The position numbers and the translations under genes are program-made. From positions 42,233,201 through 42,271,193 of the forward strand of contig NC_068995.1 of NCBI RefSeq assembly GCF_001194135.2: 37,993 bases of DNA. The letters are read 5' to 3'. The notes beneath the pieces were generated by a model. That model searched no databases and had not been told where the DNA came from. It saw only the letters and a list, made by a program, of their open reading frames with translations. Of this stretch, positions 2,797 to 36,638 are shown in pieces. Numbering within the stretch: position 1 is the first letter of the stretch; every line of letters begins with the position of its first letter. The stretch is from Octopus bimaculoides. Taxonomy: Eukaryota.

Positions 2797-3078
2797 AGTA
2801 CTTATTCTATCAGTCTCTAAGTTATTGGGACGTAAACATACCAGCATCGGTTGTCAAGCGATGCTGAAGGGGACAAACACAGACACAGAAACATATACAC
2901 ACCATACACATATATACATATATACAACGGGCTTCTTTCAGTTTCCATCTACCAAATCCACTCACAAGGCTTTGGTCGGCCCGAGGCTATAGCAGAAGAC
3001 ACTTGCCCAATGTGCCACGGCACTCGGAACCATGTGGTTAGTAGGCAAGCTACTTACCACAGAGCCACTCCAACGCCT
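2797..3078 (-). mobile_element. SINE family A, head to mid-tail
   Basis: Head GGAGTGGCTCTGTGGTAAGTAGCTTGC, CTTGGGCAAGTGTCTTC-type core, internal CA/TA tract, tail ending at AATAAGTACT. Confidence 0.9.
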
Positions 3079-6907: not shown

Positions 6908-7130
6908 AGGCTGCAAGTTCGCAGAATCGTTAGTACGCCGGCCAAAATGCTTAACGTCATTTACTCTGGCTCTTTGCGTTCTGGGTTCAAACTCTGCCGA
7001 AGTCGACTTTGCTTTTCATCCTTTCGGGGGTCAATAAAATAAACTCTCGTTGGCCACTGAGTCGATGTAATAGACTTATCACCTCCCCCGAACTTGCTAG
7101 CCTTGGGCGAAAATCTGAGACCAGTATTAT
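6908..7130 (+). mobile_element. SINE family E, copy 1
   Basis: GCAGAATCGTTAG head, GGGTTCAAACT B-box-like, GTCGACTTTGCTTTTCATCCTTTCGGGG core, tail GAGACCAGTATTAT. Confidence 0.85.
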
Positions 7131-7135
7131 AGGAA

Positions 7136-7369
7136 AGGCGGTGAGCTGGCAGAATCATTAGCGCACCGGACGAAGTGCTTAGCGGTATTTTGTCTGCCGC
7201 TATGCTCTGAGTTCAAATTCCGCCGAGGTTAACTTTGCCTTTCATCCTTTCGGAGTCGATAAATTAAGTACCAGTTACGCACTGGGGTCGATGTAATCGA
7301 CTTAATATCTTTGTCTCTCCTTGTTTGTTCCTTCTATGTTTAAGACCCTTGTGGGCAATAAAAAAATAA
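7136..7369 (+). mobile_element. SINE family E, copy 2 (alternative tail)
   Basis: GGCGGTGAGCTGGCAGAATC...GAGTTCAAATTCCGCCGAGG...GATAAATTAAGTACCAG...CTGGGGTCGATGTAATCGACTT; tail CTTGTGGGCAATAAAA. Confidence 0.9.
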
Positions 7370-7501
7370 GAAACGTTAGCACGCCAGGCGACATGCTTAA
7401 CGGTATTTCGCCCGTCTTTACGTTATGAGTTCAAATTCTACCAAAGTCGACTTTGACTTTCACCCTTTCAGGAACAATAGAATAAGTATCATTTGAACAC
7501 T
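7370..7501 (+). mobile_element. SINE family E, copy 3 (truncated)
   Basis: GTTAGCACGCCAGGCG..ATGCTTAACGGTATTTCG..GAGTTCAAATTC..GTCGACTTTG. Confidence 0.85.
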
Positions 7502-7511
7502 TCCCCTAAGG

Positions 7512-7605
7512 ATCACAGAAGGGTAAACGGCAAATTCGACTTGGGTGCGATTTGAACTCAGAATGTAAAGAGATAAAAACGAAATATGGCCAGGCATTTT
7601 ACCCC
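7512..7605 (-). mobile_element. SINE family E, copy 4 (fragment)
   Basis: GGCAAATTCGAC..ATTTGAACTCAGAATGTAAAG..CGAAAT..GCATTTT. Confidence 0.75.
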
Positions 7606-7830
7606 ATAATATTGGTCTCAAATTTTGGTACGAGGCCAACAAGTTCGGGAAATGGGGTAAGTCGATGACATCGACTCTAGTGCGCAACTCGTACTTATTT
7701 TATCGATCCCAAAAGGATGAATGGCAAAGTCGATCTCGATTGAATTTGAACTCAGAACGGGAAGACGGACGAAATAGGGTTCAGCATTTTCTCCCTCCCC
7801 GGCATGCTAACGATTCTACCAGCTCACCCC
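7606..7830 (-). mobile_element. SINE family E, copy 5
   Basis: Head-to-tail colinear with the reverse complement of copy 1. Confidence 0.85.
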
Positions 7831-7849
7831 CACTTCATCATAGCATCTG

Positions 7850-8068
7850 ATAATATTTGTTTCAAATTTTGGCACAAGGCCAGCAGTTTAGGGGTGAGAT
7901 TTAGTCGATTACAACGACCCTAGTGCGCATCAGGTCCTTATTTTATTGAATCCGAGAGGATGAAAGGCAAAGTCGACCTCGGTGGTATTTGATCTCAGAA
8001 CGTGGAGACGGACGAAATATTGCTCAGTATTTTCTTCCGGCATTCTAACGAGGCTGCCAACTCGCCCT
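7850..8068 (-). mobile_element. SINE family E, copy 6
   Basis: GGATGAAAGGCAAAGTCGACCTCGG...CTCAGAACG; colinear with copy 5. Confidence 0.85.
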
Positions 8069-11467: not shown

Positions 11468-12084
11468 GTGGACAAAATTTGGCATTGTAGCGTTACCAAA
11501 TACCTCAAGAAAAAGGGTTTAGCACACCACCAAGGACATTCATGCTGACACGGTTGTTATATTAATGGATGACACTGCAGTTTTATCGATAGTGCAGAAG
11601 CGGCCAGCTGAATTTAGGAGGGAAAGGCAGAGTCTTGAAGATGACCCGATGTCTAGACGTCCTACAACTGCTACCACTGAGGTAAACGTTGGTCGTGTTC
11701 ACCTTACGGTGATGGATGACGAGCAATTGGCTACAATTCAAATAGCTAAAGCTGTTAGCATATCCTGTGAGAGAGAGAGTTGAGAATATACTGTGCAATG
11801 AATTTGGCATGACGAAAGTTTCTGCTCGAAAGCTGCCAAGTCTTCCGATACCTGATCAAAACCGAACCAGGCTAATTAGATCAAGGGAAAATCTGACGCT
11901 GTGTCAGGCACACCCAACTGGTTTCCTTGAACGTTTCCTAAGCCATCATGAGTCTTGAGTTTATCACTTTAAGACAAAGGCAAAAAGACAATCAATGCAG
12001 TGGAAACCTTTCCTCACTTGCTCCAAAAAAGGTCAAGGTCATTTCGCTGATGGCTTCTGGGTTTTGGTACGCTAAAGATATTGC
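11468..12084 (+). pseudogene. mariner transposase relic, irritans-like, N-terminal half
   Basis: DKIWH..KYLKKKGL; AEFRRERQSLEDDPMSRRP; RVENILCNEFGMTKVSARKLP (WVP motif decayed); FLSHHES*VYHF; KRQSMQWK; MASGFWYAKDI. Two or more frameshifts. Confidence 0.92.
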
Positions 12085-14479: not shown

Positions 14480-15490
14480 AGAACTCAGAACTTGAAGTAA
14501 ACATTCAATTCACGATGGAATATAACCATCAACAACTTCTCTTCGACATTCTCATTAAGAAATCTAACAACGTAATAGAAACAGACATATACTATAAGCC
14601 CACGGACTCCAAGCAATATCTACCGTTCAACTCATGCCACCCCAGACACACCAGAATGGATATCCCCTTCAACCTAGTAAAAAGGATATGTACTATAGTT
14701 TCTAATGCAAGCACCAGAGACACACGACTGCATGAACTAAAGGATACACTCATCACCAGGTACTACCCACCTTCACTAATTGACATATGCTTTCAACGTG
14801 CCCTTCAACTCAACATCCAGGAACTCAGACATCCCAAATTAAAGAAGGATTTACAACCAAAAGCCCTACCATACATCTCCACATACAAACCTCTTAACAA
14901 TGAAACCTTCAAAACATTCCCTTGCTATAAAAAGGGCTACAGAATGAGCTTAATCCTCGAAACGCACACCATCATAAAACAGCAAGAGACAACCCAAATC
15001 TATAAAATGTCTCCTAACACAAGCCCGAATACTCCCAACAACACAGAAGCCTTCAGTAAAAAAAATGCGGAAGACCCAACTGTGGGATATGCGTGAATTT
15101 AATTGAGGGATCAGAGTTCTCCTTCAAACAGGGATGTTTCACAGTGCATAGCAACTTCACATGTGCATCGGAGAACCTGATATATGCACTAACCTGCTCT
15201 GGGTGTCAAGAGCAATACATAGGCCAAACAAAAACAGTCTTCGTAAAAGAATGGCTCTGCACAGATCCCAGATCAAAATTCCCCAAAACAGAAAAATACC
15301 ATTCAGCCAACGTATCGGTATTTGCGCCAATAACAAAAATCCAAGCTTCAATATTTTTCCACTCTACCAATTCAGCGACGATGCAACCTGTTGCCAACGA
15401 ATTAGAAAAGAGACTCTCTTTATTACAAAATACAGACCCCTTTTGAACGCGTCTACAACAAACGACATATCCACCACGGCCCTAGAATAA
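14480..15490 (+). pseudogene. Penelope-like retroelement, 5'-truncated: RT thumb plus GIY-YIG endonuclease
   Basis: IQFTME..LLFDILI..TDIYYKPTDSKQYLPFNSCHPRH (PLE RT C-terminus); NFTCASENLIYALTCSGCQEQYIGQT (LIY at 15177, YIG at 15216); LRKRMALHRSQI...KETLFITKYRPLLN. Several frameshifts; RT catalytic DD absent. Confidence 0.92.
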
Positions 15491-15995
15491 CACAAACGCA
15501 CACGCAAATGTTAAAAAATGATCCACACAAGAGATTCCCAAGAATTTATTAAAAAACAGTCCCAATCGCTGCTATAATCCATAACAAGTTCTTTTAGGTC
15601 ACTTGACCATTTAACACCCTACTACTATCATACTACCTACATTCCTTCTTACTCTCCCTTCTCTTTCTCCTTCTTCTTTGTCTTCTTCTTCTTTGTCTTC
15701 TTCTTCTTTGTCTTCTTCTTCTTTGTCTTCTTCTTCTTTGTCCTCTTCTTCTTTGTCTTCTTCTTCTTTGTCTTCTTCTTCTTTGTCTTCTTCTTCTTTG
15801 TCTTCTTCTTCTTTGTCTTCTTCTTCTTCTCCGCCAACTCCTTCCTTACTTTACTACTACTGCTGTTTAGAATAACACCTACGCAAATTTTATAAACGAT
15901 ACATTCAAAAGAGATATCTCAAGAATTCAATCATTACTATCGTCCATTACAGGTCACTTTCAGGTCACTTGACCATTTAACACACTACTATCATG
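15483..15995 (+). repeat. Diverged direct repeat of the Penelope 3' end (15483-15633 and 15868-15995)
   Basis: Both start TAGAATAACAC and share the identical 22-mer AGGTCACTTGACCATTTAACAC (15596 and 15962). Confidence 0.85.
15668..15825. repeat. 15-bp minisatellite (TTCTTCTTCTTTGTC)n, about 10 units
   Basis: Direct reading; explains the KKKTK and SSSSL ORFs. Confidence 0.95.
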
Positions 15996-16430: not shown

Positions 16431-16964
16431 ATGAAATATCAAGTTAAGAAAAACGAGTATTTTCGACACCTCCTTCTTTTTGCTTTTAAACAAGGTTCTA
16501 AGGCTGCAAAAGCTGCTCGTGACATTTGTGCTGTGTATAGACGGGGTGCCATAGATGAAAGAACCGTTCGTGATTGGTATGCCAAGTTCAAAAATGGAAA
16601 TTTTGACCTCAAAGATGCACCTCGTTCTGTCCGTCCAGATGAGTTCGATGAAGAACGATTAAACCAACTTTTGCACGAAAGTTCTCGTCAAACGACAAGG
16701 GAACTGGCAGAGAAAATGAAATGCTCCCACGCTGCTATAGAGAAGCATCTTCACTCGATGGGAAAGGTTTAGAAGTATGGAACATGGGTTCCGCATGCTT
16801 TAAGTGACAACAAAAATTAACGAGCCACAATTTACTTGCTCGTCACCGCTCAACTCATGGACACAAGCAACGATTTCTTTACCGAATCGTTACTGGCGAC
16901 GAAAAATAGTGCCTGTACATCAATATGAAGCAGCGTAAGGAATGGCTTAGCCCTGGTAAACAAG
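16431..16964 (+). pseudogene. mariner transposase relic (mellifera/cecropia-like), N-terminal half
   Basis: FRHLLLFAFKQG..ERTVRDWYAKFKNGNFDLKDAPRS.RP; TTRELAEK; stop; WVPHAL (16785); RIVTGDEK* (first catalytic D); NMKQRKEWLSPGKQ, then abrupt end. Confidence 0.95.
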
Positions 16965-17838
16965 ATAAGAAAATTGTTAAATGAAGAAATAGAAAGTATT
17001 GCTTCAGATGGACACTGTTTTAGATCAAAACTGGATGACACGACAAGTAATATTCATGTAGCTATTCTGCTCCCCAAACACAAACTGCTTAATTCGATCT
17101 ATGAACCAGTGGATTATTGTTACATTTGAAGCTTAATTTAGGGTGCGTAATTAAATTCTCTTATGGTGAAAGTAAACCTATTGTAACGGAATTTTGGCGT
17201 GGTTCCCTTTTCATAAAATGCAATTAAAAATTTGACGAGAAGACAAACATCCGTAATGAATCTTATCGATGACAAAATCTATCTCAAGACTGCATGACAA
17301 ACTTCATGGGTCTTCAGGAGCCAATGCAAAATGTTCACCAGGAGATAGTTGAGCTGATACATCCGGTTGCATTTAACGAAATGTATAAAGGACGTGGTGG
17401 AACTTTTATTTTATTAAAATTATTGTAGTTCTGACCATCCATACATTGAGCTTCAAATATATGACAGAAATTTATTTTGGATTCTTTAGCGAACTTGAAG
17501 CGAAATAAAAGTCAAGAATATTTCTGAACAAAATTTTAAGGAAAATGATAAAAAAAAGTAATAAATGAAATAAATGAATAAATAAATAAAATGGCCACCA
17601 CTAACAATAACAACAATAACACGCACGATGTAATCGAAGGGTGACCTTTCCTTTGCAGTTTGGTGTGATATTTTCCCTAAAGTAAGGCTGTTCTTTCAGA
17701 GATAAACCATATTTCTCTGGTATCCGATCTAAACCAGTTTCGTATTTCGTAAAAAGGAAATAACTTTGGTATTTATAGAAGAGAGAAAGCGAGAGAGAGG
17801 CAGAGAGAGAGAGAGAGAGAGAGAGAGGCAGAGAGAGA

Positions 17839-18150
17839 NNNNNNNNNNNNNNNNNNNNNNNNNNNNNNNNNNNNNNNNNNNNNNNNNNNNNNNNNNNNNN
17901 NNNNNNNNNNNNNNNNNNNNNNNNNNNNNNNNNNNNNNNNNNNNNNNNNNNNNNNNNNNNNNNNNNNNNNNNNNNNNNNNNNNNNNNNNNNNNNNNNNNN
18001 NNNNNNNNNNNNNNNNNNNNNNNNNNNNNNNNNNNNNNNNNNNNNNNNNNNNNNNNNNNNNNNNNNNNNNNNNNNNNNNNNNNNNNNNNNNNNNNNNNNN
18101 NNNNNNNNNNNNNNNNNNNNNNNNNNNNNNNNNNNNNNNNNNNNNNNNNN
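17839..18150. other. Assembly gap (312 N)
   Basis: Run of N. Confidence 1.
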
Positions 18151-18977
18151 TATATATATATATACATATACATTTATATATATATATAGATAGATATATA
18201 TATACATACATACATACATACATACATACATAGACACACAGACACACACACACACACTCACACACATACACATATTCATTATGTAATGTGCACATGCACG
18301 AAGACATGTATACGCATATTCACGCATATTCATCACTATATATGCATATATGTATACACACACACGCATGCACACACAAACATACACACATAACATAAAT
18401 AATATGAGTAGACCTTCAAAGAACAATACTTCCGGTGGGATAGGGCAGCAAGAAACGTGTATATCCGGTTGGCATTTTGTTGGCTTAGCCGGAAGAACAT
18501 TGCAGAGTTACCTACTCTTAGGACTACTTGCTATAGGAAGAAGGCGCTGCGTGAGCATCGCTCTTGTAGAGGATGCAGAGTTCGTAAGTAAACCAGCTTC
18601 TGGATAAAAAAAAGATGCTTAAGTAAACATAAAAATTTTGAAAAATGCCATTGTTTCTCTTTGTATGGGTGTTCATTTGTGACTATATGCACAAATAGTT
18701 ATATATATATATATATACACAGGCATGAACGCATACTGAAGTCTCTGTCTTTCAGTATGTATGCGCATTTTATATTCAAACACCCACGCACAAATATAGA
18801 TATCTAGATGAAACACACCTAAATATGCAGAGGTTTCTACATATGAAAACACTGGACTTAAGATACATCGTTGATGAGGATGATGATGTACTTACCCTTC
18901 TTAAATTTTGCGGCCATATTCTTTACTTTTAACGATTATCTGACTGTCTTTCTGTTATATGTATATATATATATATA

Positions 18978-19382: not shown

Positions 19383-19540
19383 TAGACGACAGACTTTTTC
19401 TGCCTACCAAATCCACTCACAAGACTTTGGTCGAACCGATGCTAAAGTAGAAGAAATTTGCTCAAGGTGACACGCAGTGGGACGGAATGCGGAACCATAT
19501 GATTGTGAAGCAAGTTTCTTACCACACAGTCACGCATAGG
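19383..19540 (-). mobile_element. SINE family A, 5' half
   Basis: CTACCAAATCCACTCACAAGACTTTGGTCG...CACGCAGTGGGAC...CTTACCACACAGTCAC. Confidence 0.85.
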
Positions 19541-19554
19541 AGAAATGACGTTAA

Positions 19555-19853
19555 ACACAAGTTTATATAATTTGTTTCTACGTACGTTTCACCATTGTGT
19601 TTGCTTGGAATGCAGCATTGGATATTCAAAGTGCAATTGGGTTCTTAATCACAACAGATCATCGGGAAACACTTTATTGCGCTTGTTGTAGAGAGCTAAT
19701 GCCTCATTAATTCTCTGCAACGTAAAACAAAAATGTCTTCCCCTGATGATGCGACGTAGTTAAGTACCTAAGTGCAGTTGGAATATCCAATGCAGAATTC
19801 GAAACAACCAGAATGGTGAGACGTACGTAGGAACAAATGATACAAACTTGTGT
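19555..19853. repeat. About 300-nt imperfect palindrome with a 3-nt loop
   Basis: Outer 81 bp pair without gaps at 69/81; similarity continues inward to GTTGTAGAGAGCTAATG-CCT-CATTAATTCTCTGCAAC. Confidence 0.9.
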
Positions 19854-20148
19854 AGATCATAATTTCTCTTATAAGTTCTGTATACCATAAGCAGTTAAGC
19901 AGTACTATTATTAAGTACAATAGTACCACTACACTGTACATTTCTTCAAAGGAGCCATGTTAAGGAAACACTCGGTTTAAAGGGTACGTCGTTGATGAGA
20001 TGTTGATGATACTGTCGACATTACTGTAGTTGTTCTGATTATTAATGTTGTTAGTATTGCTACCGATGTCTTCGTCCTTAGAATGGTTTCCTATTGAATT
20101 TCGAAAAAAAAAGCGTTGAAGAATTATAGATGTTTTCGATGAGTAGAA

Positions 20149-20337
20149 TTATAGATGTTTTCGATCTAGTTTAGATTCTTTGCCATCAAATTTGAATTCT
20201 TTGCCATCAAATTTGAATTCTTTACCATCAAATTAGAATTCTTTGCAATCAAATTTGAATTCTGTCCAATCAAATTTGATGGCAAAGAATTCAAATCTGA
20301 TGGCAAAGAATCCAAACTAGATCGAAAACATCTATAA
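20149..20337. repeat. 189-nt foldback element with 68-bp arms and 21-bp internal tandem units
   Basis: 20149-20216 versus 20270-20337, 2 mismatches; unit GAATTCTTTGCCATCAAATTT, 5 forward and 2 reverse. Confidence 0.95.
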
Positions 20338-20591
20338 ATAATTAAACTAAGTTTCACTACAGCCTAACTCTAGGACAAGGTGAACGCTTTGAATTTCAGT
20401 TACAGCCCATATGATGGGCTTCCACACAGTTTCCGTTTACATGACTTCCAGATTAACTCCAGGTCATGGTTGAAAACTTTTGTCCAAAACAGATATACCA
20501 TGGCGTAATTATCGAACCTCTGACCTTTACATTCCAAAATATGTTTCTTACTCTGAGTCCTTATATACGTAACACACTTTAGTACTCGGAT

Positions 20592-20641
<50 letters not shown>

Positions 20642-24458: not shown

Positions 24459-25910
24459 CTGGAAAATATAACTAAGAAAAATATGAAATGTGTATTTTAT
24501 TGCCAATATGTGTGTGTCTTTTCATACTCGTGTACTTAGATGTTTTTAAAATGTTTCTTTATGAGTAGACGTAGGTGTGTAGGTATTTTCTGAAATGCGT
24601 ATCCACGCCATCATCACAGTTAAAACCATCATCGCTATCACAACAAATGCATACAAACTAGTTTTAAAGGAACTTCTTTCAAACTCCCTATTTTGTTTTC
24701 CACACATTCACTGAAATATTTCAGCTGCTGGAAACATGTTAAACAATCTAAAGCATCAGAGAAGAAGAATAACCTAATTGTTTCTTGCAATAAATTCATC
24801 ACTATCACAACAAATGCAAACAGATTCTTTATTTCCAGCATCCATTTGCTCTTCATAGCATTGCACCAACTGACGTCCCACCTCACACGAAGGTAAACGA
24901 ATAAGTTGCCTCCAGGCTTTACCGTCTCACCAACGACGTATTTGACACACGAGCCGTCACTGAGGGTCTCAATATTTTTTATCTTGTTACACAAGCCATA
25001 AGCATTAAGATATCATTTGTTTACTTGTTTTTTTGTGTAAAGGATTTTGTGAACAATAGCATCGTATTTTCTGTGATATTTTGTGAACGATTATTTTGTC
25101 AGTGACAAAATCCCATCTGACCAAGCACTGATACACAGCTTTTAGAATAATGAGAACGACAAAAGAATGAGCAACTCAGACGAAATATACAGAATAGTTA
25201 TACTTCAAAGGACATGTTTAATGGTGAAACAAGTACCTCCTTTTTGTAGGCGGCGGGCTTGTCAATTGTTGTGAGATTTCTCTTTACGTGAAAGCACAGT
25301 TCGATATCAGCGAATCCTTCCAACAATTTTCCTGAAATTGTGATAGGTCTAAATATTTCGTTTATTCACAACGACTCTATAAATGAGCTACAGTATTGAT
25401 TCTTTGCAACAATTGACTCTTTTGTATTGACTCTTTGCAACAATTTCTTGTACTGTTGTTGTTGTTGCTGTTGTTATGTTGTCACTGCTGTCGCTGTCTC
25501 CAAAACTACTTATTTTAGTATTAGGAGCATTGTTTTCCATCAATTCTTTACTAAATGTTCATTTTCGTTTTGAACTTCTACTGTTGTGTGTTTGGACTTT
25601 GTGCTGTGTGTTTGGACTGTCTCCATTGCAGTACTTATCCTTATAGTATAAGTATGTCTGCTTGCCATTTGGATGTAATAATATCATGAATTTTTCTAAA
25701 AATTAATGTTTCAAAACACTCTCAACATTTTCCTTTTAGGTCAGGTTATCGAAGGCAGGCTTTTCTTAGATAATTACAGTTCTTTCTTACAAATAGCCCA
25801 AAGAAAATTTTATTTGGTAATACATGAGGAAATCGTGTGTCGCTGAGAGAATAGACGCGAAATCTTCGCACTATGAAAATCAAATAATAATAATCGCTTC
25901 TGTTATACAC

Positions 25911-26100
25911 ACAATCCCTGAAAATTTTGAAGGGAACATGTTAGTCGATTATATCGACTACAGTGCTCAGCGGATACATATTTAATCGACCCAGAAAGGC
26001 TGTAAAAAACAAGTCTACCTCAGTGGCATTTGAACTCAGAACGTAAAGTTGGACGAAATGCCTCTAAGAATTTTGTCCGGCACGCTAACGATTCTGCCAG
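25911..26100 (-). mobile_element. SINE family E
   Basis: TTAGTCGATTATATCGAC...ATCGACCCAGAAAGG...ATTTGAACTCAGAACGTAAAG...CACGCTAACGATTCTGCCAG. Confidence 0.85.
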
Positions 26101-26439
26101 TACACCGACTTAAAAAGAATACACCCACACACACATCTGCGTGTGTGTGTGTGTGTGCGTGCGTGCGAGTGTGGCCATATGTGTGTCAGTACGTATGCGT
26201 ATGTATATATTTATGTGGGCTACTCTCCGATATGCTTTATTTATTTTAACAGCTATACACAGCCTTATATACCCCTTATATACCCGGGAAACACTAAACA
26301 TCTTCAGGCTTCTTTCATTATATTCATTCACCCTCCTACATATCCATTCCGTTTTCTTTTTTTAATCAAATCACACTTTCCACCTGTTTTCTCATCATTT
26401 ATATTTCATATACTATTGTCTATACGCCTTTACTACTTA

Positions 26440-26512: not shown

Positions 26513-27113
26513 TCGAATTCATGGACCTCCCAGTCTATTTGTTTTTCTAAGTGATTGTCTCTATGTGTATGTATATATTAGTTTTCTTGTTTCCTTCAAA
26601 ATGATCCTATAAAAGAAGCGGCTGGTTTCCAACAAACGAACAAAGCTCCGTCGCTGGATTTGAAATAAGAACATTGGTAAAGAGTTACATTTTGTATCAC
26701 TTGGGGCAATAGTAAATTTTATGTGTTGGTCAATTTCTTTACCAAGAAACACAACGCAATATTTTCGAGATTACTGCGTTCATATATATACATTATGTTT
26801 CCTTTCATTATGCAGATCAATCATCCCTCAATAAAATCAAAACTCGTTGTTCGATTTTCTTGAAATTTTTACGGGATATGTAGGATTAAATATCCCATGT
26901 TTCGCGTAAATTTCGTCTAAATCAGTGTACATTTAAAGTGGAAATGAATAAAAACATGTTTATATGGTGTTTCTTTCTATAATGCAAGTTAACAAATATT
27001 ATATAAACTACATGTAATTTGATTTACATATAAAACAATACATAACCAGACCATTAATATATACATATATCTTCCACCATATAATTGTATTTACAAAACT
27101 TTAAGTATATATT

Positions 27114-27683
27114 TTACATCTTTATATAGCCTGCTTTACCATATATAACTTTAAATATTCTCTTATCAACTGATTTTGTCAATTTCTCAACAATCTCACT
27201 TTTGATATTACTTGCAGCAGTTTTTATTGCTTCCCATAGTAAATCTGTGTTTGGATATTGTTTACCATTCGAATATACATCTTTTTTAAAAATTGACCGC
27301 AAATCCTCTATTGGGAGAATGGCGGCGCCATCTCATTATCTTAAGTTCTTGGAAACCTTTCTGAGCTAAATGTTTAATAGTGAGTTTGGCAGACTGTGAA
27401 GGGGCATTATCATGCATAAACACGGTCTTTAACTTGAAACTTCGCGATGTTGACTTGTACCAATGAAAGAAGTTGTTATCTAGAACCTTGCAATAATTTT
27501 CAGCATTTATTTTGATTCCATCAGCAACTTTAAATGGACCTATAATATCTCCTCCAACTATACCAGCCCAAAACGATTCCCCCACTACCTTGCTGTCTTC
27601 TTAATCGTGTTGGTTGATTATTCCATGTAACACCCAGCCGCTTGCCCATCCATCAGGTCCATCTAATGTTGCTCTTCACTCAT
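27114..27683 (-). pseudogene. Tc1-like DDE transposase relic, catalytic domain and C-terminus
   Basis: E*RATLDGPDGW..RLRRQQG..FWAGIVG..GPFKVADGIKINAENYC; VFMHDNAPS; PIEDLRSIFKKDVYSNGKQY. Frameshifted; N-terminus cut at the adjoining SINE. Confidence 0.92.
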
Positions 27684-27915: not shown

Positions 27916-28095
27916 TTACATATATTATATACGACGGGCTTCTTTCAGTTTTCCGTCTACCAAATCCACTCACAAGGCTTTGGTCGGCCCGAGGCTATAG
28001 TAGAAGACACTTGCCCAAGGTGCCACGCAGTGGGAATGAACCCTGAACCATGCGGGTGGTAAGCAAGCTGCTTACCACTCAGCCACTCCTGCGTC
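27684..28095 (-). mobile_element. SINE family A, full-length, internal (CA)n
   Basis: Complete head-core-microsatellite-tail, colinear with 31757-32154. Confidence 0.95.
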
Positions 28096-29377: not shown

Positions 29378-29528
29378 TACAATGCTTGCTTCAGTTTCCG
29401 TCAACCAAATCCACTCTCAAGGCTTTAGTCGCCCCGAAGATATATTAGTAGACACTTGCCCAAGGTGCGACACAGTGGGACTGAACCCGGAACCATGTTG
29501 CTAAGAATCAAACAGCTACGTGTGTGCC
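29140..29528 (-). mobile_element. SINE family A, diverged, A box missing
   Basis: Core and tail align; head reads TAGGCACA-CAC-GTAGCT on the minus strand. Confidence 0.85.
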
Positions 29529-29941: not shown

Positions 29942-30194
29942 GGGCGCAGGAGTGACTGTGTGGTTAATCGATACAGCTACTTCACCCCTTTTATGTTTGT
30001 CTGTCCTTGTTCGTACCCTCTTTGTAATGCCTTTATGGCAAATATTTATCAAATAAAGTAGCTTGCTTACGAACCACATGGTTCCAGGTTCAGTCCCACT
30101 GCGTGGCACCTTGGGCAAGTATCTTCTACTATAGCCTCGGGCCGACCAAAGACTTGTGAGTGGATTTGGTAGAGGAAACTGAAAGAAGCCCGTC

Positions 30195-30243
<49 letters not shown>

Positions 30244-30403
30244 TGTGTGTATATGTTTGTGTGCCTGTGTTTGTCCCCCCAACACCGCTTCACAACCGAT
30301 GCTGGTGTGTTTACGTCCCCGTAACTTAACGGTTCGGCAAAAGAGGCCGATAGAATAAGCACTAGGCTTACGAAGAATAAGTCCTGGGGTCGATTTTCTC
30401 GAC
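29942..30403 (+). mobile_element. SINE family A with a 91-bp insertion in the head, 3'-truncated
   Basis: GGGCGCAGGAGTGACTGTGTGGT [29965-30055 insert] AAGTAGCTTGC..., internal (TA)n, ends at GGGGTCGATTTTCTCGAC. Confidence 0.92.
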
Positions 30404-30733
30404 ATTTTTTCGGCTATCTTGGAAACGCCTGAAACATTCGTACACTTGTGTCCGGCTCATACACTCCTCTCCATGCACTTTCTGCAATTTTGCATAGGCC
30501 TCTGAGCAGATATCACCATGACAACTTTCTCTGTCATGATCAATATGATGATCACACGCTACACACCTTCCTTCCAAGCATTGCTGTAAACAGCAGAAGA
30601 GAACTAGAACGCTAAATCTTAACGTGCATGCACAACAGATTTCAAGATCAATCTCTGCCAACCGGCTTCACTCTGCATGCTTTAGCTTCGTTACTATGGC
30701 AACAGTCCGGATACTTATTGTTCAGAACTCGTA
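30404..30733 (-). mobile_element. mariner 5' end: TA, TIR, UTR and first helix-turn-helix region
   Basis: Minus strand: TA|CGAGTTCTGAACAATAAGTATCCGGACTGT (mariner-type TIR, 30731-30702); MTEKV..GDICSEAYAKLQKVHGEECMSRTQVYECFRRFQDSRKNV. Confidence 0.88.
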
Positions 30734-30879
30734 TTTCTCTTTTACTTTTTACCATTGACTGCTTTTTTTCTGTCTTCTACGTCTCTCTCCTAACTTTATT
30801 CGCCCTCTCCAACCGTATGACTACCTCTTTCACTTTTTCTCTAAATTTCTGTCTTCGTCGTTTGACTCTCCTCCTGTCT

Positions 30880-31045
30880 CCCCTCTCTCTCTCTTTTACA
30901 TTCAGTCTCTCTCTCTCTCTCTCTCTCTTTTACATTCAGTCTCTCTCTCTCTCTCTCTTTTACATTCAGTCTCTCTCTCTCTCTCTTTTACATTCAGTCT
31001 CTCTCTCTCTCTCTCTCTTTTACATTCAGTCTCTCTCCCTCTCAC
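30880..31045 (+). repeat. Compound minisatellite [(TC)n-TTTTACATTCAG] x5
   Basis: 12-mer at 30894, 30928, 30958, 30986 and 31018. Confidence 0.95.
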
Positions 31046-31756: not shown

Positions 31757-32154
31757 GGCACAGGAGTGGCTGTGTGGTAAGTAGCTTGCTTACCAACCAC
31801 ATGGTTCCGGGTTCAGTCCCACTGCGTGGCACGTTGGGCAAGTGTCTTCTACTATAGCCTCGGGCCGACCAATGCCTTGTGAGTGGATTTGGTAGACTGA
31901 AACTGAAAGAAGCCCGTTGTATATATGTATATGTATATATCTGTGTGTGTGTTTGTATGTCTGTGTTTGTCCCCCCAACATCGCTTGACAACTGATGCTG
32001 GTGTGTTGAGGTCCCCGTAACATTAGCGGTTCGGCAAGAGAGTTTGATAGAATAAGTACTAGGCTTACAAAAGAATATGTCCTGGGGTCGATTTGCTCGA
32101 TTAAAGGCGGTGCACCAGCATGGCCGAAGTCAAATGACTGAAACAAGTAAAAAA
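31757..32154 (+). mobile_element. SINE family A, full-length (reference copy)
   Basis: A-box-like TGGCTGTGTGG, B-box-like GGTTCAGTCCC, CORE-like TTGGGCAAGTGTCTTC, short internal TA/TG tract, tail CAAATGACTGAAACAAGTAAAA. Confidence 0.95.
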
Positions 32155-32460: not shown

Positions 32461-32596
32461 GAATTACGACTTGGCATAAATAATTATGACCAACAAAAAA
32501 CCATAAAAAGACCTTTTATAGCCCCCCTCCCCCCACACGTGTCTGTGCGCAGGCGCTTATACCTCTAAATGCGCGTGTACGTAGTATGTTATTCCG

Positions 32597-32796
32597 TTTA
32601 CGCAAAATGTTTAACGCTATTTCGTCCATTTAACGTTCCGACTTCAAATTCCGCCGAAGTCGACTTTGCCTTTTATTGTTTCGGGGGTCGATGAAATACG
32701 TATCAGTCGAGCATTGGGATCGATTTAATCGATTAGCTCCCTTCCTCAAAATTACATTCTATTTATCTTTTCCTACCAAAAATTTCAGGTCTCGTA
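32597..32796 (+). mobile_element. SINE family E
   Basis: TTCAAATTCCGCCGAAGTCGACTTTGCC...GGGGTCGATGAAATACGTATCAG...ATCGATTTAATCGATT. Confidence 0.85.
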
Positions 32797-34628: not shown

Positions 34629-35102
34629 CACGCACGCACGCACATACACATACTCTTGGCATCACAAATATGCTTAATGTTACCGCAAGTTTTACAGATA
34701 TGTTCAATGTGACTTCGAGAAACACTAATAAAACTGTAGTTACATCCAAAAGATGTAACAAAAACACCATGTCGCTGGCTAGAAACGCGTTGCTTACAAA
34801 GAAAGTAAGGAAAATAACCATGATATACACTCTTCCCACATGCAAAAGCCCCTCCTTTAAAACCGTTAAAAATAGATATAAATATTCACTCCTATGATTT
34901 TATATATGTGCACAGATACGTGCGCACGCAGACAAGTAGACGTGCAAATGACCATACATGTACGCTCGTACACGCTTCTACACGCATTTGCCGTTGAAGG
35001 TTTTTGACATGAAGGTGCGTAACTTACACGGAAATGTTCACTTCTCAAAAAGTATGGTGTGGCGAAGGTAGTTTGCCACACGAAAATCTGTGTACATAAG
35101 GG

Positions 35103-35192
35103 GCGGCAAACCGGCAGAATCATTGGCAAGCCGGGCGACATGCTTAGCGGTATTTCGTCTGCGGTTACGTTCTGAGTTCAAATTCCGCCGAG
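35103..35192 (+). mobile_element. SINE family E, head only
   Basis: GGCAGAATCATTGGCAAGCCGGGCGACATGCTTAGCGGTATTTCG...GAGTTCAAATTCCGCCGAG. Confidence 0.85.
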
Positions 35193-35327: not shown

Positions 35328-35663
35328 GGCGCAAGAGTGGCAGTGTGATAAGTAGCTTGCTTACCAACCACATGATTCCGGGTTCAGTCCCACTGCGTGG
35401 CACCTTGGGCAAGTGTCTTCTACTATAGACTCGTGCCGACCAAAGACTTGTGAGTGGATTTGGTAGACGGAAACTGAAAGAAGCCCGTCGTATATATATA
35501 TATGTATATGTTTGTATCTATGCTTGTCCCCCACCATCGCTTGACAACCGATGTTGTTGTGTTTACGTCTCCGTAACTTAACGGTTCGGCAAAAGAGTCC
35601 GATAAGATAAATACTAGGCTTACAAAGAATAAATCCTGGGGTCGATTTGTTCGACTAAAGGCG
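35328..35663 (+). mobile_element. SINE family A, lacking the terminal tail
   Basis: Colinear with the reference copy to CGACTAAAGGCG. Confidence 0.95.
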
Positions 35664-35732: not shown

Positions 35733-35868
35733 GGGCTTCTTTCAGTTGTCGCCTTCCAAATCTACTCACAAGGCTGAAGCTAGAGTAGAAGACACTTGAC
35801 TAAGGAGCCACTGGGTGAGGCCGAAACCGGAACCATGTGTCCGGGAAGCATATCTCTTACGACACAAT
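35731..35868 (-). mobile_element. SINE family A, 5' half, diverged
   Basis: GGGCTTCTTTCAGTT...CTCACAAGGCT...AGAAGACACTTG...GGAACCATGTG; adjoins (TACA)n. Confidence 0.8.
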
Positions 35869-36638
35869 TACATTACACAGCACATTTTCCGATACTCCAT
35901 TGTTTTTTTATTTTTTCTTTTTTTTTTTTTCAGTTCAACGTCTTAATAAAGTACGAAACAATCTCCAATAACAGCTCCGAAACAGTCTCCAGTAACAAGG
36001 AATTGACTATCAGATGGGCAAAACTAGTTAAAACATTGTACCACAGTCTGTTTAAAACAACCGCAGAAACTACAAACAAAAAACAAAAAACAACGACGAG
36101 ACTGAATCAAAACATGGAATCGACACATTCTTAAATGTGTCTCGACATTAAAAGACTCCACTTTTATGCCTTTCTATTTATTAATGGCGCTTAATACCGG
36201 TGCCATTACTTTGATGTTGTTGTAATTTCTAGCAGTAGAAGAGCCACAGCAAACTTTGTTATTGCCCTCATTTTTAAGATATTTTTGTAGTTGTTATTGT
36301 TGATGTTGTTGTTGTTGTTGTTGTTGAATATTTCAAAATATTCTTTAATATATTCTATGTGTCTTTACACCATTTCTAAGTCTACGAAATACGTTTCTGC
36401 AAAAACCTTTAAAAAAATTGGTAGCTTTTCTATCATGGCTATCGTTGTTATTGTTATTGTTATTGTTATTGTTATTGTTGCTGCTATAGTTGTTGTTGTT
36501 GTTGTTGTTTTGGAGACGTTTTAGGTTCCCTATTTATTTTCACATTAGTATTACTGGTGCTGGCCACGGTACGAAGAGCTTAGCGTAACTGTTTATGTGT
36601 CAGATGTGTGTGAGCATACTTGTATATGAGTGTGTATG

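What the first reader, a model, noticed from the sequence alone, without database searches (positions are those of the whole stretch)
19555..19853. Cryptic 300-nt palindrome: one long hairpin with a 3-nt loop
Sequence that looks unique is self-complementary end to end. The outer 81 bp pair ungapped with 12 mismatches, the middle aligns with about two gaps, and the innermost 17 bp close on CCT (19702-19704). No ORF and no second copy in the window. Ends are CACAAG...CTTGTG with TA on the right. Mismatches show no clear G-U bias, which fits an old palindromic MITE, but such elements are an established source of miRNA and hairpin-siRNA loci, and this would be a strong ADAR or Dicer substrate if transcribed.
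Basis: partly seen in the sequence, partly recalled or inferred. Interest (0 to 1): 0.75.

Follow-up and report, generated by a model that had tools for sequence, protein, structure and literature searches.

The report
Old decayed DNA palindrome in octopus
This is a real 337-base self-complementary stretch in repeat-rich octopus DNA, but it looks like an old, neutrally decaying palindromic repeat of a kind that occurs about every 10 kb in octopus genomes, so it is ordinary.

Summary
The palindrome is real and larger than reported: 19536-19872 (337 nt), with 165 aligned arm positions (129 Watson-Crick, 7 G:T, 29 other) and a CCT loop at 19702-19704. Both strands fold equally well as RNA (z -17.1 and -16.9). 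The window is Octopus DNA, rich in SINEs, mariner remnants and microsatellites. Mismatches are spread evenly along the stem, with 16 transitions to 20 transversions, and 7 G:U against 9 A:C. That is the pattern of neutral decay of a once near-perfect DNA palindrome (about 0.13 substitutions per site per arm), with no sign of selection on an RNA helix. Similar unique-sequence palindromes occur about once per 10 kb in the window and in 40 kb of O. vulgaris DNA, and published work already ranks octopus among the animals richest in dsRNA-forming loci. I could not establish MITE identity: there is no TSD of 3 nt or more and no second copy in 75 kb, and no octopus genome could be searched. A local inverted duplication remains a live rival. 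Published work finds no siRNA pathway in molluscs. The geometry is not miRNA-like. The duplex fails a published "nearly perfect dsRNA" rule, so it would be only a mediocre ADAR substrate if transcribed. Low interest.

The parts
19536..19701 (.). Left arm of the palindrome (166 nt)
   Evidence: Self-alignment and pair table. Pairs with 19705-19872 through three 1-2-nt indels near 19664-19684.
19702..19704 (.). Central 3-nt loop, CCT
   Evidence: Sequence read, folds.
19705..19872 (.). Right arm of the palindrome (168 nt)
   Evidence: 75.5-78% complementary to the left arm; K2P distance between arms 0.259.
19536..19546 (.). Outer 11-nt terminal pairing block ATAGGAGAAAT, partner 19862-19872 ATTTCTCTTAT.
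   Evidence: 10 WC + 1 G:U of 11 in the same ungapped register, P about 8e-6. The next 10 positions outward pair only 2/10.
19547..19555 (.). 9-nt poorly paired bubble GACGTTAAA, partner 19853-19861 TAGATCATA
Evidence: 4 of 9 WC.
19397..19533 (-). Context, not part of the palindrome: an old, 5'-truncated copy of the abundant tRNA-derived octopus SINE, whose head ends 2 nt from the palindrome
   Evidence: At least 8 copies in the window and 9 in 40.8 kb of O. vulgaris DNA. It lacks the last 9 nt of the consensus head and has K2P 0.175 from the consensus.

Best explanation
This is a relic of a DNA palindrome of about 340 bp that arose once as a near-perfect inverted repeat and has since decayed neutrally in repeat-rich, probably non-coding Octopus DNA.

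The most likely origin is a dead copy of a non-autonomous DNA transposon whose whole sequence is palindromic (a palindromic MITE). It would be of a type with a short self-complementary target duplication such as TA, which would be hidden inside the terminal pairing, and it landed beside an old SINE copy.

It has no sequence-specific function of its own. If the locus lies in a transcribed intron or UTR, the RNA would fold into an imperfect duplex of about 165 bp. ADAR could deaminate that duplex non-selectively, as it does for many similar hairpins in octopus transcripts.

Shown: the palindrome, its extent, its decay pattern, the organism, and the high background density of such palindromes. 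Inferred: the transposon origin, the neutrality, and any editing.
For: Structure.

Neutral decay of a once-complete palindrome:
- Mismatches per 33-pair bin are 7, 5, 6, 10, 8 (chi2 2.06, 4 df).
- There are 16 transitions and 20 transversions.
- 7 G:T against 9 A:C, so neither strand is favoured.
- Both strands fold equally as RNA.

Age: 0.129 substitutions per site per arm. This is comparable to the adjacent old SINE copy at 0.175.

No coding or known RNA: the only ORFs are 48 and 57 aa, and they have no homologue among 5.8e9 and 1.84e9 proteins. Rfam gives nothing.

Organism and setting: a SINE-derived ORF matches O. vulgaris and O. bimaculoides proteins, and mariner HTH_48 remnants lie in the window.

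The class is common:
- About 7 unique-sequence full-length palindromes of 107-440 nt occur in 75 kb of octopus DNA.
- One of them has a second partial copy.
- Porath et al. 2017 report that O. bimaculoides has one of the highest densities of loci forming long dsRNA, and that in frog a palindromic Harbinger MITE plays this role (PMC5625713).
- Zolotarov et al. 2022 place most octopus editing in introns and 3'UTRs rich in hairpins (PMC9699675).

Termini: TA|GGAGAAAT...ATTTCTCT|TA is compatible with a TA target duplication.
Against: No defining transposon feature was demonstrated.
- No direct repeat of 3 nt or more flanks either 19536/19872 or 19555/19853. The TA reading is uninformative because TA is self-complementary.
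- No second copy was found in the window (34.7 kb without N) or in 40.8 kb of O. vulgaris DNA. This bounds the copy number only at about 1e5 or fewer.
- The ends resemble none of the transposase-bearing remnants in the window.
- The one octopus palindrome for which a second copy was found (L014:322-577) shares with that copy one arm plus the flank beyond the arm. That pattern fits inverted or segmental duplication better than a transposon with fixed ends.
- Transcription of the locus is unknown.
Confidence: 0.5

Rival explanations
1. A local, non-transposon inverted duplication. A break or stalled fork folded back on a short inverted microhomology (template switch or fold-back priming) and copied about 165 bp of pre-existing unique sequence in reverse. 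This made a perfect palindrome with a 3-nt centre, which then decayed neutrally.
For: The sequence is single-copy as far as could be tested. There is no TSD. The even mismatch spread implies the whole length was once palindromic, not only the termini. In O. vulgaris, the L014:322-577 palindrome shares one arm plus its outside flank (96 nt, 92.7%) with a non-palindromic copy 18 kb away. That shows at least one such palindrome is tied to duplication of ordinary sequence rather than to an element with fixed ends.
Against: The copy-number test has almost no power (75 kb out of about 2.7 Gb). Palindromic MITEs with TA or TTAA targets would look the same. A density of about one palindrome per 10 kb, each with a different sequence, is easier to reach by transposition of many families than by independent fold-back events, although that argument is an inference. 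The L014 case can also be read as a segmental duplication that broke inside an existing palindrome.
Confidence: 0.32
2. A functional hairpin RNA locus. The region is transcribed and the long hairpin is used, either as a precursor of small RNAs (hpRNA/endo-siRNA or a young miRNA) or as a selected ADAR-binding and editing element.
For: The fold is very stable on either strand. Octopus has exceptionally high hyper-editing and abundant hairpin substrates (PMC5625713; PMC9699675). The duplex meets the looser published rule for 'long and strong' dsRNA, namely >=65% identity to a reverse-oriented sequence within 2 kb.
Against: There is no excess of G:U over A:C and no strand asymmetry, and 22% of positions are unpaired and evenly spread. 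The longest perfect run is 13 bp and the best >=40-bp window is 90.5%, below the >95% rule for nearly perfect dsRNA. The 3-nt loop and 165-bp stem are unlike a pri-miRNA. No Rfam family matches. Published work finds no siRNA-class Dicer/Argonaute or detectable endo-siRNAs in molluscs (PMC12479628). The hairpin sits among dead repeats with no recognisable exon nearby.
Confidence: 0.05
3. An assembly artefact. A chimeric or fold-back read or mis-join created an inverted repeat inside the 1.37-kb contig piece 19272-20641, which lies between two N gaps.
For: The window is a gapped draft scaffold with 10 N runs, and the palindrome lies in a short contig piece between gaps.
Against: Artefactual fold-backs give identical arms. 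Here the arms differ at 22% of positions and by three indels. Comparable palindromes occur in a chromosome-level O. vulgaris assembly.
Confidence: 0.02

Closest known systems
Palindromic Harbinger MITE of Xenopus tropicalis (about 200-220 bp; the most hyper-edited repeat in frog; Porath et al. 2017, PMC5625713)
   Same: A short non-coding element whose whole length is self-complementary and folds on itself with a very short loop. It needs no inverted neighbour to make dsRNA. Its host genome ranks, together with octopus, at the top for dsRNA-forming loci and hyper-editing.
   Different: The frog element is a defined high-copy family with a consensus and nearly perfect stems, and its editing is documented. 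Here no family, consensus, TSD or editing could be shown, and the stem is only 78% paired.
Human MADE1 / miR-548 (an 80-bp palindromic MITE derived from Hsmar1 mariner; recalled from memory, not checked here)
   Same: A palindromic MITE in a genome that also holds mariner elements.
   Different: MADE1 is 80 bp, the size of a pre-miRNA, and has a known autonomous partner and TA duplications. This hairpin is four times longer with a 3-nt loop, and shows no similarity to the mariner remnants in the window.
Drosophila hpRNA loci (long inverted-repeat genes giving endo-siRNAs through Dcr-2/AGO2; recalled from memory)
   Same: A single long hairpin of hundreds of nucleotides encoded at one locus.
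   Different: That mechanism needs a dedicated siRNA Dicer and Argonaute, which a survey of 32 molluscs did not find (PMC12479628). hpRNA stems are kept well paired, whereas this one has decayed evenly.
Other unique-sequence palindromes in octopus DNA: window 20124-20337; O. vulgaris L014:322-577 and 1888-2213; L015:8853-9208, 11582-11688 and 17660-18099
   Same: Similar size range (107-440 nt), full-length self-complementarity, short centre, AT-rich, non-coding, and embedded among SINEs. Fold z-scores are -17 to -23.
   Different: They are unrelated in sequence to this one, and most are younger (arms 86-97% complementary against 78%).

Membership tests
MITE (miniature inverted-repeat transposable element) | Short (under about 800 bp) with no coding capacity | tested here: met
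   The element is 337 nt. The only ORFs are 48 and 57 aa, mirror images of each other, with no homologue.
MITE (miniature inverted-repeat transposable element) | Terminal inverted repeats | tested here: met
   The whole length is an inverted repeat, including an outer 11-nt block with 10 WC + 1 G:U.
MITE (miniature inverted-repeat transposable element) | Target-site duplication flanking the ends | tested here: inconclusive
   No direct repeat of 3 nt or more at 19536/19872 (2 of 8 flank matches by eye) or at 19555/19853 (1 of 8). TA|GGAGAAAT...ATTTCTCT|TA is possible, but TA is self-complementary and so cannot be told apart from the stem.
MITE (miniature inverted-repeat transposable element) | Many dispersed copies with shared ends in unrelated flanks | tested here: inconclusive
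   No further copy in the window or in 40.8 kb of O. vulgaris DNA, which bounds the copy number only at about 1e5 or fewer. Metagenome and viral pattern scans gave only chance seeds. No octopus genome could be searched.
MITE (miniature inverted-repeat transposable element) | Ends shared with an autonomous transposon | tested here: not met
   Tested only against the window. There is no significant similarity to the mariner (16431-16772, 30368-30661) or Tc1-like (27286-27585) remnants or their surroundings. The one weak hit at 26941-26979 (E 0.04) is AT-rich and itself a small hairpin.
Animal miRNA precursor | Hairpin of roughly 55-80 nt with an imperfect duplex of about 22 nt and a sizeable terminal loop | tested here: not met
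   The stem has 165 pairs, the loop is 3 nt, and mismatches are spread along the whole stem.
Animal miRNA precursor | Membership of a described miRNA family | tested here: not met
   No Rfam match at gathering threshold or at E up to 10 over 19536-19872, apart from noise.
Animal miRNA precursor | Discrete 5p/3p reads with Drosha/Dicer offsets | not testable with these tools
   This needs the small-RNA libraries, for example those of PMC9699675.
hpRNA / endo-siRNA locus | Host has a dedicated siRNA Dicer and Argonaute and detectable endo-siRNAs | tested here: not met
   From the literature rather than this sequence: none were found in 32 molluscs, including O. bimaculoides (PMC12479628).
hpRNA / endo-siRNA locus | Long, well-paired inverted repeat that is transcribed | tested here: inconclusive
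   It is long, but only 78% paired, with a longest perfect run of 13 bp. Transcription is not testable here.
ADAR hyper-editing substrate (operational rules of Porath et al. 2017) | Reverse-oriented similar sequence within +/-2 kb, >=65% identity over most of the region | tested here: met
   75.5% identity over 339 aligned columns against its own reverse complement. The rule is quoted.
ADAR hyper-editing substrate (operational rules of Porath et al. 2017) | Long, nearly perfect dsRNA: >95% identity over at least 40 bp | tested here: not met
   The best window of >=40 bp is 90.5% (42 bp, 19555-19596 / 19853-19812). The neighbouring palindrome 20149-20337 passes with 97.7% over 43 bp.
ADAR hyper-editing substrate (operational rules of Porath et al. 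2017) | Transcribed, with clusters of A-to-G mismatches in RNA reads | not testable with these tools
   No RNA-seq data or gene models for this locus were available. Exact-ORF look-ups found no annotated record.
Local fold-back / template-switch inverted duplication | Single copy, with one arm continuous with ancestral flank, and an unduplicated site in relatives | not testable with these tools
   This needs octopus genome assemblies. The composite six-frame search for any annotated orthologue or paralogue found none.

The most novel reading that the evidence does not exclude
The hairpin lies in a transcribed intron or UTR, is kept across Octopus species, and serves either as a selected ADAR docking or editing-inducing element for a neighbouring transcript or as the raw material of a lineage-specific small RNA. 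It would then be one concrete example of how the unusually dense palindromic repeats of octopus genomes feed the cephalopod editing and miRNA expansions.
Probability: 0.03. Interest if true: 0.5.

Novelty: new member of a known kind. Interest (0 to 1): 0.15.

Why it matters
On its own this element matters little. It is one more decayed hairpin-forming repeat in a genome already reported to be exceptionally rich in dsRNA-forming loci and in ADAR hyper-editing.

The only wider point is at the level of the class. In this small sample, octopus DNA carries about one unique-sequence, full-length palindrome per 10 kb. The repeat families or duplication mechanism behind them were not named in the papers I read. 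A genome-wide census of these palindromes would explain where the octopus surplus of ADAR substrates comes from. Such a census should record their families, ages, TSDs, position in introns and UTRs, and editing. This locus would be a single data point in it.

Tried and rejected
1. Palindrome inserted into the SINE. The adjacent SINE copy stops 9 nt short of the consensus head, 2 nt from the palindrome, so I looked for the missing TCCTGCGCC after 19872 or 19853. The best local score is no better than for 59% or 95% of random octopus 20-mers. In addition, 3 of 11 other SINE copies are also 5'-truncated. Rejected: the SINE simply abuts the palindrome.

2. Link to the Tc1-like remnant. A weak match of the left terminus to 26941-26979 (E 0.04) is AT-rich and is itself a small hairpin. 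Rejected.

3. ORFs as handles to other copies.
- Exact look-ups of the two arm ORFs and three other ORFs found nothing on record.
- A profile of the two arm peptides found nothing in 5.8e9 or 1.84e9 proteins.
- A control with a SINE-derived ORF returned only 5 annotated octopus proteins. These databases therefore cannot measure the copy number of non-coding octopus repeats, and the negatives carry little weight.
- A composite six-frame query of 18400-18977 plus 19384-20592 also found nothing.

4. DNA pattern scans. TTGTTYCTACGTACGTYTCACC gave 0 hits in metagenome and viral contigs. GCATTGGATATTCNAANTGCA gave 13 metagenome hits, and all of them stop at the 21-31-nt seed.

5. One larger element spanning both palindromes. 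The spacer 19873-20123 and the downstream 20338-20592 have no meaningful repeats, and the two palindromes are unrelated and of very different age. Rejected.

6. Rfam hits of the second palindrome to long plant MIR families occur on both strands and are far below gathering scores. They are generic hairpin matches.

7. The octopus genome paper (PMC4795812) is not held, so no published dating of repeat bursts could be cited.

Full report

Yes. The inverted-repeat finder reports arms 19536-19666 and 19742-19872, 131 nt and 79% complementary. A gapped alignment of the region with its own reverse complement covers 19536-19872 continuously, with three 1-2-nt indels between 19664 and 19684. Of 165 aligned arm positions, 129 are Watson-Crick, 7 are G:T and 29 are other mismatches.

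Folded as RNA, the plus strand gives -154.1 kcal/mol against -73.8 +/- 4.7 for dinucleotide shuffles (z -17.1). As DNA z is -12.2, and the minus-strand RNA gives z -16.9.

- The outer 81 positions from 19555 have 69 WC pairs and 12 non-WC.
- The innermost 17 positions have 14 WC, 2 G:U and 1 A:C.
- The loop is CCT at 19702-19704.

Two corrections are needed. The palindrome is 337 nt, not 299. Beyond a 9-nt poorly paired bubble (19547-19555 / 19853-19861, 4 of 9 paired), an outer block 19536-19546 / 19862-19872 pairs 10 WC + 1 G:U of 11 in the same register (P about 8e-6). Pairing then stops, with 2 of the next 10 positions paired. Small ORFs of 48 and 57 aa do lie over the arms. They are translations of the two arms in the same frame, 58% identical to each other, and have no homologue anywhere.

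**2. Where are we?**

The window is a gapped eukaryotic draft scaffold with ten N runs. It has about 35% G+C and is crowded with (CA)n, (TA)n and other microsatellites. It contains mariner HTH_48 remnants at 16431-16772 and 30368-30661, a Tc1-like transposase fragment at 27286-27585, and a retroelement-like ORF pair at 14515-15446 (identified by eye only, with no Pfam hit).

The 137 nt immediately left of the palindrome (19397-19533) are a copy of a tRNA-derived SINE. This SINE occurs at least 8 times in the window. An ORF read across one SINE copy matches annotated proteins of Octopus vulgaris and O. bimaculoides, so the organism is an Octopus. Two 20-kb loci from the O. vulgaris chromosome assembly (L014, L015) carry nine further copies of the SINE.

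No exon-like ORF with a Pfam domain lies near the palindrome. No annotated record of this locus could be found. Whether it is intronic, in a UTR or intergenic is therefore unknown.

**3. What the sequence says about its history**

- The 36 mismatches are spread evenly along the stem: 7, 5, 6, 10 and 8 per 33-pair bin, chi2 2.06 with 4 df. The whole length was therefore once complementary, not only the ends.
- There are 16 transitions and 20 transversions.
- Mismatches that would be G:U in a plus-strand RNA (7) are no more common than those that would be G:U in a minus-strand RNA (9 A:C).
- The two strands fold equally well.

Nothing here suggests selection to keep an RNA helix. It is the picture of neutral decay of a DNA palindrome.

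The Kimura distance between the arms is 0.259, or about 0.13 substitutions per site per arm if the arms started identical. The neighbouring SINE copy is one of the oldest in the sample, at 0.175 from the family consensus against a median near 0.06. The two ages cannot be ordered, given their errors.

The SINE copy lacks the last 9 nt of the consensus head and ends 2 nt from the palindrome. I tested whether the palindrome had split the SINE. The missing 9-mer is not found after either candidate right end (no better than 59% of random 20-mers). Truncated heads are also common in this family, in 3 of 11 other copies. The SINE simply abuts the palindrome.

**4. Is it a member of a repeat family?**

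This is the decisive question, and I could not answer it.
- The window holds no second copy of either arm, nor do the two O. vulgaris loci. Together that is 75.5 kb of a genome of about 2.7 Gb (size from memory), so the bound is only about 1e5 copies or fewer.
- The public DNA collections at hand hold no octopus genome. One arm-consensus pattern gave no hit in metagenome or viral contigs. The other gave 13 metagenome hits that end at the seed.
- Protein-indexed routes also failed. The SINE control shows why: only annotated octopus proteins are indexed, and a SINE present about every 4.5 kb returned only five hits.
- No target-site duplication of 3 nt or more flanks either candidate boundary. 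The reading TA|GGAGAAAT...ATTTCTCT|TA is possible, but TA is its own complement and cannot be told apart from one more base pair of the stem.
- The ends resemble nothing near the transposase remnants in the window.

**5. How unusual is such a palindrome in octopus?**

Not unusual. I scanned the window and the two O. vulgaris loci against their own reverse complements. After setting aside microsatellite artefacts and inverted SINE pairs, these full-length, unique-sequence palindromes remain:
- window 19536-19872 (this one);
- window 20124-20337;
- L014:322-577 (99-nt arms, 95% complementary);
- L014:1888-2213 (144-nt arms, 87%, RNA z -23);
- L015:8853-9208 (114-nt arms, 86%, z -18);
- L015:11582-11688;
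- L015:17660-18099.

That is about one per 10 kb. All are different in sequence, and most are better paired than the one under study.

This agrees with published genome-wide work:
- Porath et al. 2017 found that O. bimaculoides and Xenopus tropicalis have exceptionally high hyper-editing. They also have the highest fraction of loci able to form long, nearly perfect dsRNA (4.4e-3 and 3.2e-3). In the frog the main substrate is a palindromic ~200-bp Harbinger MITE that folds on itself (PMC5625713).
- Zolotarov et al. [quoted passage not shown]

One side observation bears on the origin of this class. The L014:322-577 palindrome shares 96 nt at 92.7% with a site 18 kb away. The shared piece consists of one arm plus the flank outside that arm, and the second site is not palindromic. 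At least one octopus palindrome is thus tied to duplication of ordinary sequence. Either an inverted duplication made the palindrome, or a segmental duplication broke inside it. It is not an element with fixed ends. This keeps the non-transposon origin alive for the present case.

**6. Mechanism and rivals**

My best explanation (0.5) is a dead copy of a palindromic non-autonomous DNA transposon that has decayed neutrally. The main rival (0.32) is a one-off fold-back or template-switch inverted duplication. The two differ only in how the palindrome was born, and both predict no function. Taken together, I put about 0.85 on the statement that this is a neutral, decaying DNA palindrome.

A functional hairpin RNA gets 0.05:
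- The decay pattern argues against it.
- The geometry (165-pair stem, 3-nt loop, longest perfect run 13 bp) is not miRNA-like, and Rfam has no match.
- A survey of 32 molluscs, including O. bimaculoides, found no siRNA-class Dicer or Argonaute and no detectable endo-siRNAs (PMC12479628).

For ADAR, the duplex meets the looser published rule (>=65% identity to a reverse-oriented neighbour) but fails the "nearly perfect" rule (>95% over >=40 bp): its best window is 90.5%. If transcribed it would probably be edited at a modest level. That would be ordinary for octopus, not a discovery.

An assembly artefact (0.02) is excluded in practice by the 22% divergence of the arms and by like palindromes in a chromosome-level assembly.

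**7. Comparison with known things, and novelty**

It works like, or once worked like, the palindromic MITEs exemplified by the frog Harbinger element. It may or may not be a member of that kind, because copy number, TSD and an autonomous partner are untested or not met. It is not a member of any described miRNA family, and it is not an hpRNA locus in the Drosophila sense. I file it as a new member of a known kind: hairpin-forming palindromic repeats, already known to be abundant in octopus.

**8. Verdict**

Interest is 0.15.

The neighbouring young hairpin at 20124-20337, and the class-level density of palindromes in octopus DNA, are more worth a follow-up than this element.

Noticed in passing
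window 20124-20337: A second, unrelated and much younger hairpin lies 250 nt downstream. Its 68-nt arms (20149-20216 / 20270-20337) are 97% complementary (RNA -106 kcal/mol, z -16.7). It is built from five 21-bp tandem units, ATTCTTTGCCATCAAATTTGA, followed by about two inverted units. The outer 17-mer TTATAGATGTTTTCGAT occurs twice in direct orientation (20124, 20149) and once inverted (20321). It passes the published 'nearly perfect dsRNA' rule (97.7% over 43 bp). It is foldback-element-like and a better ADAR or small-RNA candidate than the reported palindrome. No second copy was found in 75 kb.
   Followed up: partly
window 19536-19872 and 20124-20337; L014:322-577 and 1888-2213; L015:8853-9208, 11582-11688 and 17660-18099: Full-length unique-sequence palindromes of 107-440 nt occur about once per 10 kb in this sample of octopus DNA, and all are unrelated in sequence. 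This may be the genomic basis of the published excess of dsRNA-forming loci in octopus. The families or mechanism behind them were not identified.
   Followed up: partly
L014:505-600 and L014:18327-18422: One arm of the O. vulgaris palindrome L014:322-577, together with the flank outside that arm, recurs 18 kb away (96 nt, 92.7%) at a site that is not palindromic. This points either to an inverted duplication of ordinary sequence or to a segmental duplication that broke inside a palindrome.
   Followed up: partly
window 6913-8065: A 1.15-kb self-complementary block (about 66%) turns out to be a cluster of an abundant 130-240-nt dispersed repeat in both orientations. Further copies lie at window 25887-26122, 32577-32753 and 35081-35192, and at several places in L014 and L015.
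   Followed up: partly
window 19397-19533, 2942-3068, 27949-28086, 29395-29511, 30056-30172, 31766-31902, 35337-35473, 35751-35871: A tRNA-derived SINE with an internal (TA)n/(CA)n microsatellite occurs about once per 4.5 kb, both here and in O. vulgaris. Much of the window's microsatellite load sits inside or next to these SINE copies. Copy ages range from K2P 0.02 to 0.22 from the consensus.
   Followed up: partly
window 16431-16772 (+), 30368-30661 (-), 27286-27585 (-), 14515-15446 (+): Transposon remnants. Two ORFs carry the Mos1-type HTH_48 domain (E 3.5e-20 and 2.7e-5). There is a Tc1/mariner-like DDE fragment, and an ORF pair that looks by eye like the C-terminal part of a Penelope-like element with a GIY-YIG motif; these last three ORFs have no Pfam hit.
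   Followed up: partly
window 15658-15828 and 30876-31043: Two minisatellites: a 15-bp unit CTTCTTTGTCTTCTT repeated 11.4 times (96% matches), and a unit of about 30 bp rich in CT repeated 5.5 times.
   Followed up: no
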